A DNA stretch of 64,000 nucleotides from Tubulanus polymorphus (Eukaryota > Animalia > Nemertea): positions 7,138,655 through 7,202,654 of the forward strand of contig NC_134033.1 in the NCBI RefSeq assembly GCF_964204645.1, written 5' to 3'. The position numbers and the translations under genes were made by a program. A model generated the notes under the pieces. That model worked only from the letters and a program-made list of their open reading frames with translations. It had not been told where the DNA came from and made no database searches. This document shows positions 5,553-63,848 of this stretch, in pieces (the stretch's first letter is position 1; each line of letters opens with the position of its first letter).

Positions 5553-6276
<724 letters not shown>

Positions 6277-6745
6277 CTAAAGCTTTAAGGTCGCGTAAAA
6301 CTCGATAAACACTTCAAGCGACACAGCGAACGATCTCCTTTCCCCCACTGCGAACGCTTACTCCGAATGTCAAGTGTGAGTCCAGCATACGGATAGGAGT
6401 GTGGTATATACTTGTATTCAGTAAATACCTTGTGGATTTGACAATGATCGGTATGTACTGTAGGAAATATAGAGTATTGATGGTATTGATATAGAGGGCC
6501 GCGGCCGAATAAAGTAATATATTCTTTTATTTTGATACCTCGTCGACATAACAGCTTTTCTCCGCTATATCTCTTCGGCGTGTTTAGTTAAGGCCTACGA
6601 CTCCCCGGTACACTTATGATTTATCTTAGTAAAAACACGGTAAATTTGGTAAAGAAAAATAGGTATTGCTAAATTAACTGCTTGACGCCCGCAGCCAAAT
6701 CACTGGTAGTAATAAATTAATTTGTACTCGATTTGATTCTCAGAA

Positions 6746-7533: not shown

Positions 7534-8067
7534 CAATTCTGTTCGATTGAACGAAATACTTAATACTTTCGGTTCGGAGAAAAAACTTTTTTCAATATAC
7601 TTGTTCGAACGAAAAACTTAATGTTCTGACAAGAAAATTCTGTTCAAATTAAAACGATTCTGTTCAATTGAATGATTGTTGGAATGAAAAACCTTTCGTT
7701 TGGACAAAAAAAAAGTTTGTTCAACTTTGTTCTAACGATTTTTTCAAATTGGTTCAATTGTATAGAATATTATTGGTTCGAACGAAATAAATTTTGTTCC
7801 GACGAAAGAATTTTCAAACGAAAGGTCTTTTGAACGAAAAAAAAAGATATTTCTGGTGCTCCGCAGTAACTTAAAGCCAGACGTAGGTTGTTCTTGTGAC
7901 ACGATGCGATCCTCGCGTTGCATCGCAAGTTTCGATGCAAGTCGCTTGCAATACGATTGTGTGCGACTAGTTTCTGCCAGTCGCAAGAGCGCGTCGGTTG
8001 GTTGTGACAGTCGTGTCGCGTCGCAGAAAGTAGAACACGTACGACTCAATGTGACTGGCGTTGCTGA

Positions 8068-8225
8068 AAGATGAGGACGCCAGTGATATGACGACTGAGT
8101 TTCAAGTCGTCAAAACGTCCCGATATGTCGACATATTCATGTCGAATTGATGCGATATATCGACATAAATATGGCGACTTGTCGAGTTGTAACGCAACAA
8201 CTCGAGTCCCTTTATCGCTTCCGTA
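8068..8225. mobile_element. Partial copy of the same MITE (one end)
   Basis: Matches the 7313-7533 arm with deletions; ends in TTATCGCTTCCGTA. Confidence 0.75.
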
Positions 8226-35615: not shown

Positions 35616-35712
35616 TCAGGCCTCAGTGTCATCGCCATCGTGTCCCTTCAAACGCAGCCGGGCAAAATCTTCGAATATCAAATCATCGTCATGGTCAAAG
35701 AGCGCTTCACCA
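35616..35712 (-). CDS. ARRB: Beta-arrestin, last coding exon
   Basis: Acceptor tttcag; reads GEALFDHDDDLIFEDFARLRLKGHDGDDTEA*, containing the AP-2 beta-appendage-binding motif DxxFxxFxxxR. Confidence 0.96.
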
Positions 35713-36712
35713 CTGAAATTCAAGAAAGATAATAGGATGCATTTAGAATACAGCGTCACTATCTATATCTATTGCATCAGTGCTAACCAACTTTAAAAAC
35801 ACTCATAAATAAATTGCCCATGGGCAAAGTGTGGTTTACCTTGAAAGCCAGTGTTTGGTGTAAGGGCATTGCTTGAAAAATCTTTTTAATTTGTGACTTC
35901 AAAGTTCTAGAAGTTTATATTGTATTTTATCTTTCTTAAAGAATTATTTTGTAGCCAAATAAGACCATAGATGAACATTTGTTTATGGTCTTCGTCCAAA
36001 ATTTCGTAGCGTACAGGTAGACGCGGCAGGGAAATTATCTTATATTTTCAAAAAAATATTTTTCACAATATGAACAAATATTCAAATAAAATTCATATGA
36101 TGTCACATATCAGAGGGTGGGTGAATATTGAGTCTTGGAAACGAAACCTCTTCCAATATATGGCCGCGGAAGCTAAAACACCAGGCCGCGTTAGATCGTT
36201 TTATATCCTTGAATTTACCACTTCTACAATATTCAGACCTCATCTTATACGTATAGTTCACTGCTTAGTACTTTCCGGTCACTTACTCAAGAAATTATAA
36301 TTTATTACAAATTCTATCAAACAGAAAACACAGCGCTCATCTTCTGCTACGACGATTATTCAGCTTGTTATCATATCAAACGTGACGTGCCAAGCAACGT
36401 TACAGCATCACCATATTGTAGTCTGTATGAGCGTGTGTTTGTGTGTGCAACAGTCTAATGTTTAACACTCCGCGCACGTGGAGGCCTTGTGTAGTGAACG
36501 TTTGCTTCACTTCAATCGCAATCGACACAATCACCGGGTATTAAAATGAAACAATACCTATGGCGATATGTGAAATAATTATATTTTTCACCAGCAATGA
36601 GCATTTAAAATTTGCACATATACGGCACCTATTCCAATGAAATGTTCGCCATTAATGGCTTTCCCATGATTATTTTAGTAGCGCCGGAATTCCCTGTATA
36701 TCCCAAAAACAG

Positions 36713-41013: not shown

Positions 41014-41154
41014 TTTGTTTCAAGTTGTATAAGATTAGTATCTATAGGTGGTTCGTTTGAACCAGGAGCCACTGCGCTGATTGGTCGACTTGGAGGTGGA
41101 GATTCAAGAGGTTTTGGATGCGTGATAGTAAATGGTAACTCAACTGCCAATTCA
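41014..41154 (-). CDS. ARRB: Beta-arrestin exon with clathrin box
   Basis: tttcag|...|gtaagt, phase 2-2; ELAVELPFTITHPKP...PIDTNLIQLET. Confidence 0.96.
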
Positions 41155-42870: not shown

Positions 42871-42997
42871 AACTTCACTAAAGCGAAAGTCCATGAAAAT
42901 AGGACCCATTTATTTATACGGAATAAGAGCTTAACTGGATAACCGAACACAAATTAACCGAAGTTGACTTAATCATTAAGGAAGTGGGTTGACTTAC

Positions 42998-43084
42998 CCT
43001 GCTACTAGTCCAAGAATAAGTCGAACTTTCACTTTGTACTGAACAACAATACCAAGATTTTCTTTCTGATTTTGGTCCGATAAT
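42998..43084 (-). CDS. ARRB: Beta-arrestin exon (C-domain)
   Basis: ttgcag|...|gtaagt, phase 2-2; LSDQNQKENLGIVVQYKVKVRLILGLVAG. Confidence 0.96.
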
Positions 43085-54271: not shown

Positions 54272-54418
54272 ATAGTTGATGATGCTAAATTAGTGTCTTC
54301 ATGTTTCAACTTTCCATCGAGCGCGAGGCCACGTTTGTCTCTATTATTCAACAGCAGTGGAGTCAAATAGTAGACTTTACAGAAACCTTGAGTGCTCGGC
54401 TGTATTGGAAATCCTTCC
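54272..54418 (-). CDS. ARRB: Beta-arrestin exon (lariat/gate loop)
   Basis: ttctag|...|gtaagc, phase 2-2; [48 protein letters not shown]. Confidence 0.97.
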
Positions 54419-57210: not shown

Positions 57211-59006
57211 TGGGAATATACTACAGTGAAACAATTATCCTACTTCCGATCAATGGTCTTGTTTTTTGCATGAATCGCTTCCCATAGTATATCAAGAATC
57301 ATCGAAATCAACTATAACAATAAAATGGCAAAATTCCTACATTTCAACATGTTTTTATCTAATAAGGGAAACTAGCAGAAAACACTAATAATCAACTCAA
57401 ATGGGCCAGTCGCTCAAAAGGTAGGATACAACATGCCTGATGTGTCTGTACATGTATATCTAATTTCATCGAAAACACCAATAACAATCATTATTGATAC
57501 ATATTAATATGTTTTACGTATATAAAATGGGAAACTAGCAGAAACGGGAAACTGGCAGAAACAAGAATAGTCACCTCGAATGGGCTAGTTGCTCAAAAGT
57601 TAACCGCTAGTTGCTATACCTTTCAATATAATTCTTTAGTGGATCCATTTAACCATTGGTTAACCATTGGCTCAATTTAGCTTATTTTTGAGCAACCGGC
57701 TCCTGATTAATCAATCATTTTCGAGTAAGACATTCTATTTTAGTCACATTCATTGAACATGCTTTGAATTATAATAACATTCAAAATTGGTTATGATATG
57801 AACAACAATGTTATGATATGTACATATTTTCAATAGACATAATGAAATCACTCTAAATATAAAAGCTTAACTTAAATCATCATGTAATAAAAGTTAGAAG
57901 ATTAAGCTAGCATTGCTCGAGAGGATTGGCAGTTCATACACCACAAGGATGGCCAAGGAAAGTCCCAGTATAAGGGCCAGTCAAACCCGCATATGCTAAA
58001 TTACCAATGAGAGGTATTTGTAGAAATCTGCTCAGTGACTTTTTCATATCTGAGAAATTATGAAAAATCTTTAACAGCTTTCAATCTGGAAATAAGCTTT
58101 TTCTAATTGTTAGATTAATAAAGGGGCAGAAAGAAGTTCCATACAGCCTTGTACTGGATCCTCCTCACAAGAGAAATTGCCTCTACCGATTTGGCAACAA
58201 AGATGCTAGGATTATACTAAAAGATATGTAAATGACTGGAAAGTAAATCTTTATGTGACTGATCCAAATACATAAGCAAATCACCAGATTATCTTGTGTT
58301 GAGATATATTCAATAATTAAGCCTAACAAGTCCTACACCCTATTTAGCCAATTAATTAATTGTCACAATTTGTTGAAAATTATTTGGGTTTCAACATGAA
58401 TCTCTTATTGGTGTCAGATTTAACACAGGAAATTGACAAACGCCTCACTGAGCCAGAAATTCTTAGCATGTGCGCAGGATTGGCTTGGTTAGGTAGGGGC
58501 AGGATCATGATGCTAAGTGTGAAGAATGATATGGTTAAAAAAGAAAAACAAGAACAAACAGACGAGTAAATGAATGATAAAGAGAACTTGCCTGTTGCTG
58601 CTACTGATAGTGAGAAAAAAACAGATACAAATACATCAAAACAATATAGCATCATCATATTATAGCACAGATACACAGAGGAAAACTGTTCACACGTCAA
58701 TTGACATCTAGATCAGATGCCCATTTCATATCGAACATATCCCAGTTTTCTCCTCAAACAATAAACAATAAACAATTTATTTTTATTTTTTAGATATCAG
58801 GGTTTCCTTTAAGGATTCTTAAACACATACCAGGAAAATGTTTTGATGAATATCAACTTAGAAATTCAGGTTTAATATATGTCAATTGAGTAAACCCCAA
58901 GGTTAAATTCAACAATAACCTCAATTTGGACAATAATCTCCAGTGTCACAGGTCAACGGCAAAGATTTTTCACATACAATTCCATCACAGATTGCCCGAG
59001 ATTAAT

Positions 59007-61190
59007 ACCAGGGGTCCAGGGACACCATGCCCCCTTGGAAGGTGGTTTCAAATACCACAATCTAACAATTTCAAATGCCCCCAGGTGATCATAAAAAAAC
59101 CAATGACCTTGAAACTCGCCAAAATCATAGAGCATGCCACGAGCTATAAGCAATTGACTGTGATAAAAAAAATATACCTAGGTACCAATAAGATATGGAA
59201 ATACTAAACCATTCTACTATTGAACGCCCCTGGTGACCATATGTAAAACCTAATGACCTTGAAACTCACCACAATCATAGAAAATGTCATGAGCTACAAC
59301 TTTGCAATTGATTGTGGTAACAAAATATGCATAGGTACCAATATGATGTAGAAATATGTAGTTATTATATTATTCAATGCCCCTGCCGGCCATATGCAAA
59401 AACCAATCACCTTGAAACTCACCACAATCATGAACATGTTATGAGCCACAAATTTGCAATTAATGGTGGTAACAAAATTTGTTTAGGTACTAACATAATG
59501 TGGAAATACTAAGTAATTCTATCATTCAACGCCCCCTGGTGATAATATGCCAAAATCAATGACATTGAAACTCACAACAATAATAAAACATGTCATGAGC
59601 TAAAACTTTGCAATTGATTGTGGTTACAAAATCTGCTTAGGTACCAATATAAATAGACAAATTATATATCATTCGATATTTAACTTCCCCTAGTGGCAAG
59701 AACAAAGAATTAGGTGATTCCAATTCCATGTGAGGAGATGTATCTCATGACAGTGCTAATAACAGCCTATCAGTCAAAACCTCTTGATATTTTCCTAAAA
59801 AAAAAAACGTTTTACCACCTATAGATGAATACTGATGACACTAAGATGACCGCCAATTGCTGATCAAAAATACCTGTCTGATGTATTAAAAATCCCTTTC
59901 CATAGAATACCCATCACAAATTTAAATGAAAAATAGCAATCCATTAAGAAGCTACAGGACTCAAAATTCGGACCAAAATTGACATTTTCGGGCAAAAAAC
60001 AGGTCACAGGACAGCCATCTTGTGTACAATCGCCCAAATTTTTCACATGCTAATGGGCCCTAGGGGGATGCAATTATATACAAAAGATTTAGGAAATTGA
60101 TCCAAGCGTCTTCAGAATTTCCCTCGAAAAATGTTTGAAAAGTGCTGATTTCGGCGAACAACAATGGCTGCCAGGCGGCCATCTTGATTCTGACCAGTTT
60201 TAGGGCTGAGGTGTGTCTAGGATAGATTACGTGTGCAAACCAAATATCAAGGCATTACATTGAAGCTTCTTAAAACTTCCCAAAATAACTGGATTCCGTC
60301 TATGGACGGACAACGGACGAAAAGTGAACGCAATACGGGATATCGACAAATTCAAGTTCTGGAATTTCTGGTTTGATGGCGCTAGTCAGAACCGGAAATT
60401 GGACCCTAAATCCACCATGTTTTAGTTCATTTGCAATAAAGATCTCTCGCTTCAGGTTTTTGATGAGCGTTTTTTTACTTACTATGTATCGTCATGATAA
60501 ATCCTTCCAATGTGATATTTTACCGTTATGTTGGATTCGATAAAACCTCACTACAAAGGCTAGAAATCACTATAAATGTCCTAAAATCATCGAAAACATT
60601 TTGTGACAGCTGACGATGTAAAGACTGGTTGCCAGGTATCACATGGTGGCAGCACATGACGACCCAATTTTTGATTGTCGGTTCGAGTCCTGATACTTTT
60701 CATATTTTTATTATGGATCTACGATTGCATTCCTTCAAAAATCAATTTTATTTCTTAATATTATTTCGTATTTATCAGTGTAGTCAGCAATAAATTCACC
60801 TTAGAGTCTTGAAGTGAACAACGAAGTGATGACACCCGGCACCAGTCTTTACTTTCGTTTGCTGCTTCGAACGTCATCGCTAAATTTGTGATTATTGGTA
60901 ATTTTTTGACATTTTAAGCAATCTTTAGCGTTTGAAGTTTTCTTTTATCGAACCCAATACATTGCCAGGATATCATACTTAAAGGATTACGTGTGACGAT
61001 GTATAGTAAGTAAAATATCTCTAACTAAAAGCTTGATCCGCGAGATTTTTATTGCAAATGAACTAGAAAATGCCAGATTTAGGTTACAATTTCCGGTTCT
61101 GACTAGCGCCATCAAACGAGAAATTCCAGAACTTGAATTTGTCGATATCCAGTATTGCCTGCTGGGACTAAAGTCCCAAGTGGGCTAAAA
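59007..61190 (+). mobile_element. Helentron-associated element, family A, second copy
   Basis: 5' AGGGGTCCAGGGACACCATGC, ~150-bp tandem repeats, GGACGGAC, and 3' GGGACTAAAGTCCCAAGTGGGCTAAAAA, as in 9031-10282. Confidence 0.8.
60336..61152. mobile_element. Fold-back MITE with long TIRs, flanked by TA
   Basis: GGATATCGACAAATTCAAGTTCTGGAATTTC..GATGGCGCTAGTCAGAACCGGAAATT mirrored at 61089-61150; absent from the 10240-10260 paralogous site. Confidence 0.88.
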
Positions 61191-62198
61191 ATGGCACAAT
61201 TAAAAAGCCAGAAGACATTGATCTGAAGATAATAATTCAAACAAATATTTCAACAACTGTATCTAAAAAATTTACTTATTTGAAATGTTCTAATTCAAAA
61301 TAATACAAGTGTCATGCAATTTCACCACACTTTAAGGGATATTTTTTTGAAACAACAAAATACAACACTAAAATTATTTTGATTGATACATATATCACAG
61401 AAAGGAAAAAAATGACTTAAAAGGTGGAAATTATGGCCCACTTGATAAATGAATAAAAATATGATGAAGGACCCAAACCTTTATGGCAAAGCTTTCCGAG
61501 TTGGACTTTGTAAGGGTAAAAGGTTTCAATCAAGAAAGTGGACTCAGCTGCACAGAGTGCACTGAGTGCATTTCTCTTTCTAAAGCAAGTAAAGCAAGTC
61601 TCAGTTCAAAGATATCAAACTTAAATGAGAGAATTTGATTGAGGTCTACAGATACTTTCAATTTGTTAGCACCATAATGAATCTATGTCTACCAAAAAAT
61701 TCTCAGCTTAGAATATGTAACACAGCCTCCAAGCTCAGTGGTTTGTTTATAAAAGCATGCCCAGTCTTCTTTTTAGAATTAGTTTGTTTCTGATCTTAAA
61801 AAGTTATTGTTTTCAAATTTGCTCATGCAGGTAGTGGGCTTTTGTATCACGTATCCAGAATCCATTAGTAACTAAACCAATTTCTTAGTGATACTAGATT
61901 AGACCTGGATTAAATGAATATCTGGAATAAACCAATTTTGGCTAAGCAGGTTTGGCTGTACATAGACAGCAGATAGGCTACTTGTTTGCTAGATTAAACA
62001 TGAACGTTAAGATCAAAATCTAGGGCCTTAATTTGAGATGGCCCAAATAATTGCTGAATAACAGAACAGATAACAGAATAGATGACAAAATTCAATCTGT
62101 CTGAAGGGAATTTATTTTTGTGAAACTGAGTCCTGGGTAGTTGATCTGGAAAAGTGATCTGAAGTGGCAGATAGAGGGAACCCATCAAATAAACTTAC

Positions 62199-62271
62199 TC
62201 GCTTTCCAGTTCGGCAACAGTGCACTTGTATTGAGCAGTAGAAAACAAACAAATATCGGCGAATTGTCGAA
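62199..62271 (-). CDS. ARRB: Beta-arrestin C-loop exon, canonical variant (A)
   Basis: ttatttcacag|...|gtaagt, 73 nt, phase 1-2; (V)RQFADICLFSTAQYKCTVAELES(E). Confidence 0.96.
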
Positions 62272-63775
62272 CTGTGAAATAATGAAGGATGAACGAAAAC
62301 TAAACATAAAAAGCTTTTTGATGGGAAAAAAACATCAACATTGATTAAACAATTGTCTAACATACTCAATCTGCTGTACCTGCCAGTGGCATTTTTCGAT
62401 ACATGAGGTGAAATTGTGCGAAAACCAGTATATATGGTATAACGAAACTCCCTAGAGCTATGTCTATTGAGTTGGATCAGGTTTTGAGTAGGTGACGAGT
62501 TAAAATCAGTATATGTTTGATTATCTAAATCTAGAGTCAAATCCACAGACACAAAAGTGAAACAAGGAACTGGACAAGCCAGTCAATGTTGGGGGTTTAA
62601 GATTTCAAAATGCTCTCTAAATTGGGGCATTTAACGCTTTAGTTGTGTGATCAGCTTGGACTGGCTTTAAAGGCCTTAAATTAGAATCGCTATAGGCTAA
62701 TCTGGTCTAAACAACTTGACAGAAAGCTATGACAAAATAATGTCCTACAGCACACTAATGGCATCTGGTGGACGACTTGCTAGTAATATCACCAAACCAA
62801 AGGTAGATCATTGAACCTTACAACATCCCCCTTATAGACACAGCCCAGCATAACACCAAATTTTTTAACTAAAATTCAAAATTGAATTTCCAAAGTGTTG
62901 ACCATTTTATTACAAAGTTTTCATAATCCCATTAAAACCTTTTTGTCGTTCAATTTCACTTTCAAGGCAAAGCAGATTTTTTTCATAGCTAAAAAAGAGA
63001 TTTGAAAAACAGAGCTAAAAGAGAGTTGACAGGCGAAAAACATACATATTTCTAAACAACAGCAGTGAGAAAAATCAATGAATGAATACATAATTGACAT
63101 TGAGATAATAAAAATCATCAAACTCTGTGAAGCGTGATGTACCAGATGTGTGATGTCAGCCCTGGCAGGATAGTTAAAATATCTGTTGAAAGGATCTGTG
63201 ATGCGCAAGTAAAAAGTAAGACATTTTTCATTGAATTTTGATTGAAGCAACTATACCAAAGGCTGCAAATATTGATGTCAGAACATTTTTAAAAAATGCA
63301 TCCAAGAAGATGCAATCTTTAAGAGGATGATATTTAAATCTTCCCCTGCCATGGTCGAACTAAAAGTGGAATGAATGTGAAGAAACTATCATATCTAAAA
63401 TTACAGAAATCATCACAGCTGCCAAGGCATAACAAGCAACAACCAGAACCCTGTTACACAGATGTGAGTTAAAACTTGACCCTCTAGGTAAGGTTATCGA
63501 AAATAAAATAATTTCAACTTTCTAAACTCAAAACCATAGCATACTCGTCACACAAGTTATAAAGAATTCTTTGGAATTAAAACAATTGGAAATGAATTAA
63601 ATTTGCGTCAAACTTAACTCACATGTAATGCTAGGGCCAGAACAACAGTTTACACGTCTGGTACATCAATACTACGTAAAATTAAATACTGAAAATAAAA
63701 ACCAATAAAAATAATATTGACAAAAACGCAACATATACAAATAATGGGATAATCCTGGTAGGTGGCACCACTTAC

Positions 63776-63848
63776 TCCGTCTCCAGTTCGGCAACTGTAC
63801 ATTTATAGTTAGCTTTACTGAACAGCATAATGTCAGCGATTTGAACAA
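63776..63848 (-). CDS. ARRB: Beta-arrestin C-loop exon, alternative variant (B)
   Basis: ttttccttcctcatcgctgcag|...|gtaagt, 73 nt, phase 1-2; (V)VQIADIMLFSKANYKCTVAELET(E). Confidence 0.88.

What the first reader, a model, noticed from the sequence alone, without database searches (positions are those of the whole stretch)
62199..63848. Duplicated, probably mutually exclusive exons swap the receptor/phosphoinositide-binding segment of beta-arrestin
Seen: two homologous 73-nt exons 1.5 kb apart, each with a pyrimidine tract, CAG acceptor and GTAAGT donor, both phase 1-2 and open. Either one splices in frame to 54418; including both or neither shifts the frame. A encodes VRQFADICLFSTAQYKCTVAELESE and B encodes VVQIADIMLFSKANYKCTVAELETE. 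Shared residues often use different synonymous codons (gcc gat/gct gac, tac aag tgc act/tat aaa tgt aca), which points to an old duplication kept under protein-level selection. Known: this segment matches mammalian beta-arrestin-1 residues ~235-258, containing the C-loop that contacts receptors and R236/K250 of the K232-R236-K250 phosphoinositide site. Inference: B loses the R236 equivalent (to Val), changes C242 to Met and adds a Lys in the loop. One gene could therefore make two arrestins with different GPCR or lipid preference, a splicing alternative to arrestin gene duplication. I do not know of this being described.
Basis: partly seen in the sequence, partly recalled or inferred. Interest (0 to 1): 0.92.

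Follow-up and report, generated by a model that had tools for sequence, protein, structure and literature searches.

The report
Ancient alternative exon pair in beta-arrestin
The only beta-arrestin gene of the ribbon worm Tubulanus polymorphus carries two interchangeable 73-base exons that swap a receptor- and lipid-contacting segment, and the same pair occurs in annelids, brachiopods and molluscs, so it is real and old but its functional effect is untested.

Summary
On the minus strand, exon B (63848-63776) and exon A (62271-62199) are both 73 nt, share the same phase, and have CAG acceptors and GTAAGT donors. They are 49/73 identical in DNA and 17/23 in protein. Either one alone keeps the frame; both together or neither gives an early stop.

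The genome is Tubulanus polymorphus (Nemertea). An NCBI model, "arrestin red cell-like isoform X2", contains exon B exactly. No RNA reads were available, so usage in this worm rests on that model.

Comparative evidence is strong:
- The same order (upstream exon, B-type, A-type, next exon) occurs in the annelid Dimorphilus and four unnamed invertebrate genomes. Every copy is 73 nt with AG/GT sites, inside introns that no longer align.
- B-type proteins exist for Lineus, Lingula, Terebratalia, Peronia and Argopecten.
- The scallop cDNA equals the A-type protein of the same species except in this segment.
- Worm-host contigs in metagenomes carry two genes, one of each type.

All 13 B-type copies lack Arg236, 12 have a basic residue at 246, and 9 also lack Lys250.

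I found no paper describing this. It is a new member of a known kind (tandem mutually exclusive exons). The scan noted the same stretch twice before.

The parts
63776..63848 (-). Exon B, the variant 73-nt exon. It encodes residues 255-279 of P0332 and has Val at the R236 position, Met at C242, Lys at T246 and Lys250 retained.
   Evidence: Sequence and frame. Identical to NCBI isoform X2 of Tubulanus polymorphus. Present on the haplotig and in an independent DNA run.
62199..62271 (-). Exon A, the canonical 73-nt exon, with R236, C242, T246 and K250 as in vertebrate beta-arrestins.
   Evidence: Aligns to beta-arrestin-1 residues 236-255 and beta-arrestin-2 residues 237-258. The protein is identical in several other species.
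62272..63775 (-). The 1,504-nt intron between B and A. It is too long for steric exclusion, and no convincing pairing elements were found.
   Evidence: The inverted repeats found are at chance level for this length.
58592..58603 (-). A 12-nt microexon with a CAG acceptor and a GC donor. It replaces one Glu by Asp-Ser-Ser-Asn-Arg at the junction with the next exon, and it is used together with exon B in the NCBI isoform X2 model.
   Evidence: Found by pattern. It explains the extra residues in P0332.
54272..54418 (-). The next constitutive exon (147 nt), to which A, B or the microexon splice.
   Evidence: Matches beta-arrestin residues 264-305. 100% identical to P0332.
42997..43083 (-). Downstream coding exon. 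Limits are from the protein match and are approximate.
   Evidence: tblastn of P0332, 100% over residues 333-361.
41016..41153 (-). Downstream coding exon. Limits are approximate.
   Evidence: tblastn of P0332, 100% over residues 362-407.
35619..35723 (-). Last coding exon, carrying the adaptor-binding tail typical of non-visual arrestins. Limits are approximate.
   Evidence: tblastn of P0332 residues 405-439.

Best explanation
This is a genuine pair of tandem-duplicated, mutually exclusive exons in the single beta-arrestin gene of Tubulanus polymorphus.

The upstream exon (outside the window) splices to either B or A. The chosen exon then splices to the exon at 54418, sometimes through a 12-nt microexon. 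Because each exon is 73 nt, only messages with exactly one of them encode a full arrestin. Messages with both or neither hit an early stop and should be degraded or give a truncated protein.

The swapped 25 residues form two beta-strands of the C-domain and the loop between them. These are the C-loop of the receptor interface and two of the three basic residues of the phosphoinositide site. Form A is the canonical one. Form B removes Arg236 and puts a basic residue on the loop tip.

The pair is old. It is shared by nemerteans, annelids, brachiopods and molluscs. In some worms it appears to have been resolved into two separate genes, one of each type.

Shown: the anatomy, the frame logic, the conservation, purifying selection on B, and the use of B in database transcripts or models.

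Inferred: strict exclusivity in this worm, and that B changes lipid or receptor preference.
For: Anatomy and frame.

Identity of the gene and organism: P0332 (NCBI, Tubulanus polymorphus isoform X2) lies on a contig of 16,481,795 bases, the length of the window's contig. It matches the window's exons at 100% and contains exon B. It carries Arrestin_N and Arrestin_C.

One locus only.

Same arrangement elsewhere, every copy 73 nt with AG/GT:
- L015 and L017.
- L034 and L039.
- Dimorphilus gyrociliatus, L105.
- Introns do not align between these species, while exon A does.

Selection on B:
- L034 against L039: pS 0.55, pN 0.05.
- Lineus B differs from Tubulanus B at one residue.
- The B-type exon of the worm paralogue has pN at most 0.055 with pS 0.27-0.52.

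Transcript-level evidence:
- The Argopecten cDNA protein P0349 equals RefSeq P0316 except in this segment.
- The protein entries for Terebratalia (P0347) and Peronia (P0353) are B-type.

Family trait:
- 0 of 13 B-type copies have Arg or Lys at 236, against 17 of 17 A-type copies with Arg.
- 12 of 13 B-type copies have K, R or H at 246.
- 9 of 13 B-type copies lack Lys250.

Origin of B: B-type copies cluster on a tree, needing 2 label changes against 9.6 in shuffles. One origin is not rejected (AU p 0.41).

Fold: the AlphaFold model of P0332 puts the segment in two strands (248-261, 267-277) with a loop at 262-266.

Role of the residues: the K232Q/R236Q/K250Q mutant is the standard phosphoinositide-binding-deficient beta-arrestin (PMC10030194). 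The C-loop is part of the receptor interface (PMC7913897).
Against: - No RNA reads of this species could be laid. The only run found is genomic DNA.
- Use of A, absence of B-plus-A messages, and tissue pattern in Tubulanus are therefore not shown here.
- The NCBI model is an automatic prediction, and I could not see its read support or the other three cluster members.
- No pairing elements that would enforce exclusivity were found.
- B-type copies are very divergent in molluscs and Dimorphilus. With only 25 columns the tree cannot prove one origin.
- One related genome (L016) and the A-type worm gene lack B.
- The structure model is only moderately confident (mean pLDDT 67).
Confidence: 0.85

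Rival explanations
1. The exon pairs arose by separate duplications in each lineage and converged on similar changes. They would not descend from one duplication in an early lophotrochozoan.
For: - Tubulanus B is closer to its own A (49/73 nt) than to the B exons of L015 or L017 (40 and 38 of 73).
- The tree of 25 columns is mostly unresolved.
- This gene does duplicate exons repeatedly. The upstream exon is doubled in L016 and the next exon is doubled in arthropods.
Against: - B always lies upstream of A.
- Synonymous sites between A and B are saturated within every species tested, so none of the duplications is recent.
- All B copies share loss of Arg236, and nearly all share a basic residue at 246.
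- B copies cluster far better than shuffled labels, and one clade is not rejected.
Confidence: 0.15
2. Exon B is transcribed and modelled, but in Tubulanus it is a minor or regulatory exon with no distinct protein role. For example, its inclusion might serve only to tune arrestin levels.
For: - No read-level data were available here.
- The only direct support in this species is an automatic gene model.
Against: - B alone keeps the frame, so it is not a poison exon.
- Its protein sequence is almost unchanged between Tubulanus and Lineus.
- It is under purifying selection in other pairs.
- In some worms a whole gene carries only the B type.
Confidence: 0.07
3. Exon B is a decaying leftover of a duplication (a pseudo-exon), an assembly artefact, or part of a separate partial gene copy.
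For: An open frame of 24 codons alone is weak evidence, since it arises by chance in roughly a third of random sequences.
Against: - Splice sites, length and frame are intact in six genomes whose introns are randomised.
- Both haplotypes and an independent DNA run carry it.
- No other arrestin exons lie near it, and the genome has one locus.
- It is present in a database protein.
Confidence: 0.02

Closest known systems
Classical tandem mutually exclusive exons (for example pyruvate kinase M exons 9/10, SNAP25 exons 5a/5b, tropomyosin)
   Same: Adjacent homologous exons of equal length and phase. One is chosen per message, a structural segment is swapped without changing the fold, and the pair is conserved over long times.
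   Different: The gene family is different: I found no report of such a pair in an arrestin. Here exclusivity at the protein level follows from the 73-nt length alone. No pairing or splice-site incompatibility was seen.
Vertebrate arrestin paralogues (beta-arrestin-1, beta-arrestin-2, rod and cone arrestins)
   Same: They diversify receptor and lipid handling within one fold. The worm-host contigs and flatworms with one A-type and one B-type gene show the same outcome reached by gene duplication.
   Different: In Tubulanus the variation is confined to 25 residues and is produced from one gene by splicing. The vertebrate beta-arrestins all have Arg236 and Lys250.
Known arrestin splice variants in mammals (beta-arrestin-1 isoforms 1A/1B, beta-arrestin-2 long form, rod arrestin p44; the last two from my own knowledge)
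   Same: One arrestin gene gives more than one protein. 'Isoform 1B of beta-arrestin-1' appears among the solved structures.
   Different: Those are cassette or terminal-exon events in loops or the tail. They are not a swap of core strands and the C-loop, and not duplicated exons.
K232Q/R236Q/K250Q ('3Q') beta-arrestin mutant
   Same: Like the mutant, B-type forms lack Arg236, and in 9 of 13 cases also Lys250.
   Different: The mutant is man-made and changes only three side chains. B-type exons also change the loop and usually add a basic residue at 246. In Tubulanus Lys250 is kept, so any loss of lipid binding may be partial.
Duplicated 147-nt exon in arthropod beta-arrestin (kurtz)
   Same: A tandem exon duplication in the same gene family, one exon further downstream. 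It is seen in Cyprideis and many insect models.
   Different: It is a different exon whose length is a multiple of three. Models therefore include both copies in frame, and it is not the segment studied here.

Membership tests
Beta-arrestin (non-visual arrestin clade) | Arrestin_N and Arrestin_C domains | tested here: met
   P0332, the product of this gene, carries PF00339 and PF02752. Single exons alone gave no Pfam hit.
Beta-arrestin (non-visual arrestin clade) | Close sequence match to solved beta-arrestins across the C-domain | tested here: met
   The next exon matches beta-arrestin-1/2 at E about 1e-16. Exon A matches residues 236-255.
Beta-arrestin (non-visual arrestin clade) | C-terminal clathrin- and adaptor-binding tail, absent from visual arrestins | tested here: met
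   The P0332 tail holds the conserved acidic Phe-Glu-Asp-Phe-Ala-Arg stretch and a Leu-Ile-Gln-Leu-Glu box. That these are the binding motifs is from my own knowledge.
Tandem mutually exclusive exons | Neighbouring exons are homologous, with equal length and phase and their own splice sites | tested here: met
Tandem mutually exclusive exons | Exactly one copy gives an open frame; both or none do not | tested here: met
Tandem mutually exclusive exons | Transcripts carry one copy and never both | tested here: inconclusive
   - The B-only model exists in this species.
- A-only and B-only proteins exist for one scallop gene.
- Spliced metatranscriptome contigs of relatives carry A only.
- No RNA reads of Tubulanus were available.
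Tandem mutually exclusive exons | Both copies are kept by selection in other species | tested here: met
   Six genomes carry the pair. B has pN 0.05 against pS 0.55 in one pair.
Tandem mutually exclusive exons | A mechanism that enforces the choice (competing RNA pairing, steric block, incompatible splice sites) | tested here: not met
   Both exons use GT-AG sites, the intron between them is 1.5 kb, and the inverted repeats are at chance level. Frame loss followed by message decay remains the only supported filter, and that step is inferred.

The most novel reading that the evidence does not exclude
Lophotrochozoans have, for over half a billion years, used one beta-arrestin gene to make two functionally different arrestins. 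One is a canonical, phosphoinositide-dependent form. The other is a form with a dismantled lipid site and a recharged C-loop. The second form would serve a distinct receptor set, possibly opsins in photoreceptors, since the scallop arrestin cDNA is B-type and chiton photoreceptors express this gene. In clitellate-like worms and flatworms the same division of labour would later have been fixed as two genes.
Probability: 0.3. Interest if true: 0.8.

Novelty: new member of a known kind. Interest (0 to 1): 0.62.

Why it matters
How a few arrestins serve hundreds of receptors is an open question. The dependence of beta-arrestin on membrane phosphoinositides is a current topic (PMC10030194).

This gene offers a natural, conserved switch at exactly the residues that laboratories mutate: Arg236 and Lys250, plus the C-loop. 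That gives ready-made isoform pairs from several phyla for binding and recruitment assays.

It is also a clean example of alternative splicing and gene duplication as interchangeable routes to the same diversity. Some worms carry the two exon types in two separate genes.

In practice, the annotation of Dimorphilus misses exon A. Published 'arrestin' clones from scallop and brachiopod are the variant form, which matters when they are used in phylogenies or as probes.

Tried and rejected
- RNA evidence. The one search for sequencing runs, made with exon B, returned a single run. Laying it showed continuous genomic coverage across introns, so it is DNA. No junctions could be read.
- Pfam on single exons gave nothing.
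- A word-based protein search with the B-type region of the flatworm protein P0121 found only itself.
- The Lineus protein is not on record in the contig index, so its locus could not be inspected.
- Haplotype comparison (99.4% identity) and the DNA run's variants are too sparse to say anything about 146 exon bases.
- Inverted repeats around the exons are at chance level, so I reject them as docking or selector elements.
- The Gomez et al. 2011 paper on scallop arrestin is not held. Its link to entry F1D8X2 is from my memory only.
- Squid visual arrestin (6bk9) is not closer to B than to A, so I dropped the idea that B is simply 'visual-like' in sequence.
- I did not build or search a joined A-form protein for Tubulanus. 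Exons were searched one by one by reference, and frames were checked exon by exon. Only the single flanking G on each side was added in scripts, to read the split codons.

Full report
**What is in the window**

The gene runs on the minus strand. Exon B (63848-63776) and exon A (62271-62199) are each 73 nt. Each follows a pyrimidine tract and a CAG acceptor, and each is followed by GTAAGT. Both are open in the frame that starts at their third base. They share 49 of 73 bases and 17 of 23 whole codons.

The exon before them lies outside the window, at window-equivalent 84886-84802 (contig C9:7223540-7223456). It ends with one G, which together with the first two bases of either exon makes Val. 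The exon after them is 54418-54272.

Frame logic was checked exon by exon:
- After B, exon A would be read in a shifted but open frame, and the next exon then stops at its 14th codon.
- With neither exon, the next exon stops at codon 18.
- So only messages with exactly one of the two encode a full protein.

No third copy lies in the window, in the 20 kb upstream, or elsewhere in the genome. A second contig, C17, is a 99.4% identical haplotig that carries both exons.

**What the gene and organism are**

The next exon matches solved beta-arrestins at E about 1e-16. Exon A aligns to beta-arrestin-1 residues 236-255, and exon B aligns more weakly to the same place.

A search with a full-length relative returned P0332, named by NCBI "arrestin red cell-like isoform X2 [Tubulanus polymorphus]". 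It lies on a contig of 16,481,795 bases, exactly the length of the window's contig. P0332 matches the window's exons at 100%. The window is therefore from the palaeonemertean Tubulanus polymorphus.

Searches of the whole assembly with the upstream part, the next exon and exon B find only this locus and its haplotig. The animal seems to have one gene of this type.

**Exon B is used in a gene model**

P0332 residues 255-279 are exon B, letter for letter. Between B and the next exon the model has five residues where one Glu is expected. I traced these to a 12-nt microexon at 58603-58592, with a CAG acceptor and a GC donor.

**No read-level evidence was available**

The one run that holds exon B is genomic. 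Its contig covers 61170-64000 without a break. For Tubulanus itself, expression of B therefore rests on the NCBI model, and exclusivity rests on the frame argument.

**The pair in other animals**

By fetching contigs that encode the conserved next exon, I found the same order (upstream exon, B-type exon, A-type exon, next exon) in five further genomes:
- L015 and L017.
- L034 and L039.
- The annelid Dimorphilus gyrociliatus, L105. There the published protein uses the B-type exon, and an intact A-type exon 135 bases downstream is left out.

Every one of these exons is 73 nt with AG and GT. Synonymous sites between the species are saturated, and the introns do not align at all. An unselected exon would not have kept its length, frame and splice sites.

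In the closest pair, L034 and L039, B has pS 0.55 and pN 0.05. Exon A is almost frozen even at silent sites (pS 0.07), together with about 25 bases of intron on each side. This is a common mark of regulated exons.

Named proteins with a B-type segment are:
- Lineus longissimus isoform X2, which differs from Tubulanus B at one residue.
- Lingula anatina isoform X3.
- Terebratalia transversa.
- Peronia verruculata.
- Argopecten irradians.

The scallop case is the most direct. Entry F1D8X2 (P0349) and the RefSeq protein of the same species (P0316) are 354/378 identical, with nearly all differences inside these 25 residues.

**Two genes instead of two exons**

Metagenomes that contain host DNA of small worms each hold two arrestin loci. 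One has only an A-type exon and one has only a B-type exon. For example, two contigs of Ga0209363 show this. The B-type exon there is under strong purifying selection.

The monogenean Cichlidogyrus has a compact paralogue whose single exon is 20/25 identical to Tubulanus B.

One relative (L016) has only A, but a doubled upstream exon.

**What the swap changes**

In an AlphaFold model of P0332 (mean pLDDT 67), the segment forms strands 248-261 and 267-277 joined by a loop at 262-266. These correspond to the two C-domain strands and the C-loop of beta-arrestin.

The C-loop is part of the receptor interface (PMC7913897). Lys232, Arg236 and Lys250 are the residues changed in the standard phosphoinositide-binding-deficient mutant (PMC10030194).

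Tubulanus B has Val for Arg236, Met for Cys242 and Lys for Thr246, and it keeps Lys250. The table compares the two types across all copies:

| Position | B-type (13 copies) | A-type (17 copies) |
|---|---|---|
| 236 | none has Arg or Lys | all have Arg |
| 246 | 12 have Lys, Arg or His | 16 have Thr |
| 250 | 9 have lost Lys | all have Lys |

On a tree of the 25 columns, the B label needs two changes against 9.6 for shuffled labels. A single B clade is not rejected (AU p 0.41). Resolution is poor, however.

The consistent pattern fits a form with a weakened lipid site and a recharged loop. That this changes lipid or receptor preference is inference.

**What is known**

I found no paper that mentions duplicated or mutually exclusive exons in an arrestin. 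The chiton study PMC4689004 shows that this gene type is expressed in photoreceptors.

From memory, the scallop clone comes from a study of ciliary photoreceptors. That paper is cited in PMC5839723, but it is not held.

**Verdict**

- The pair is ancient and widespread in lophotrochozoans.
- It is a new member of a known kind, already present but unremarked in databases.
- The functional reading is plausible and directly testable.

Noticed in passing
window 58592-58603 (minus strand): A 12-nt microexon with a GC donor is used in the NCBI isoform X2. Short insertions at the same junction appear in proteins of Haliotis, Owenia, a shrimp and some unnamed transcripts, so this microexon may also be old.
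   Followed up: partly
window about 58900-61250: A repeat inside the intron between exon A and the next exon. In the DNA run its summed contig depth reaches hundreds of thousands, with many internal deletion joints. It is probably a very abundant mobile element.
   Followed up: no
G000 contig C17 (181 kb), about 25000-74200: A haplotig that repeats the whole arrestin locus at 99.4% identity. Any copy counts in this assembly should allow for such duplicates.
   Followed up: partly
P0001 (Cyprideis torosa), P0002, P0175-P0179 and other arthropod models: In arthropod beta-arrestin (kurtz) the 147-nt exon after the one studied here is tandemly duplicated. Many models include both copies in frame, which lengthens the protein by 49 residues.
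   Followed up: no
L016 7911-7991 and 8097-8177: In this relative the exon upstream of the pair is itself present twice, 186 bases apart, with one residue different. No B-type exon was found there.
   Followed up: no
L034 about 7970-8090 against L039 about 6195-6315: Exon A and about 25 bases of intron on each side are 92.6% identical between two species whose introns otherwise do not align. Silent sites of A are far more conserved than those of B, which suggests splicing signals inside and beside exon A.
   Followed up: partly
L090 5462-5530, L096 4208-4267, L098 5483-5551: The B-type-only worm gene carries a partial second copy of the next exon about 450 bases downstream of the first.
   Followed up: no
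L105 3278-3350 (Dimorphilus gyrociliatus, CAJFCJ010000006.1): An intact canonical A-type exon is missing from the published protein DgyrCDS5340, which uses the very divergent B-type exon instead.
   Followed up: yes
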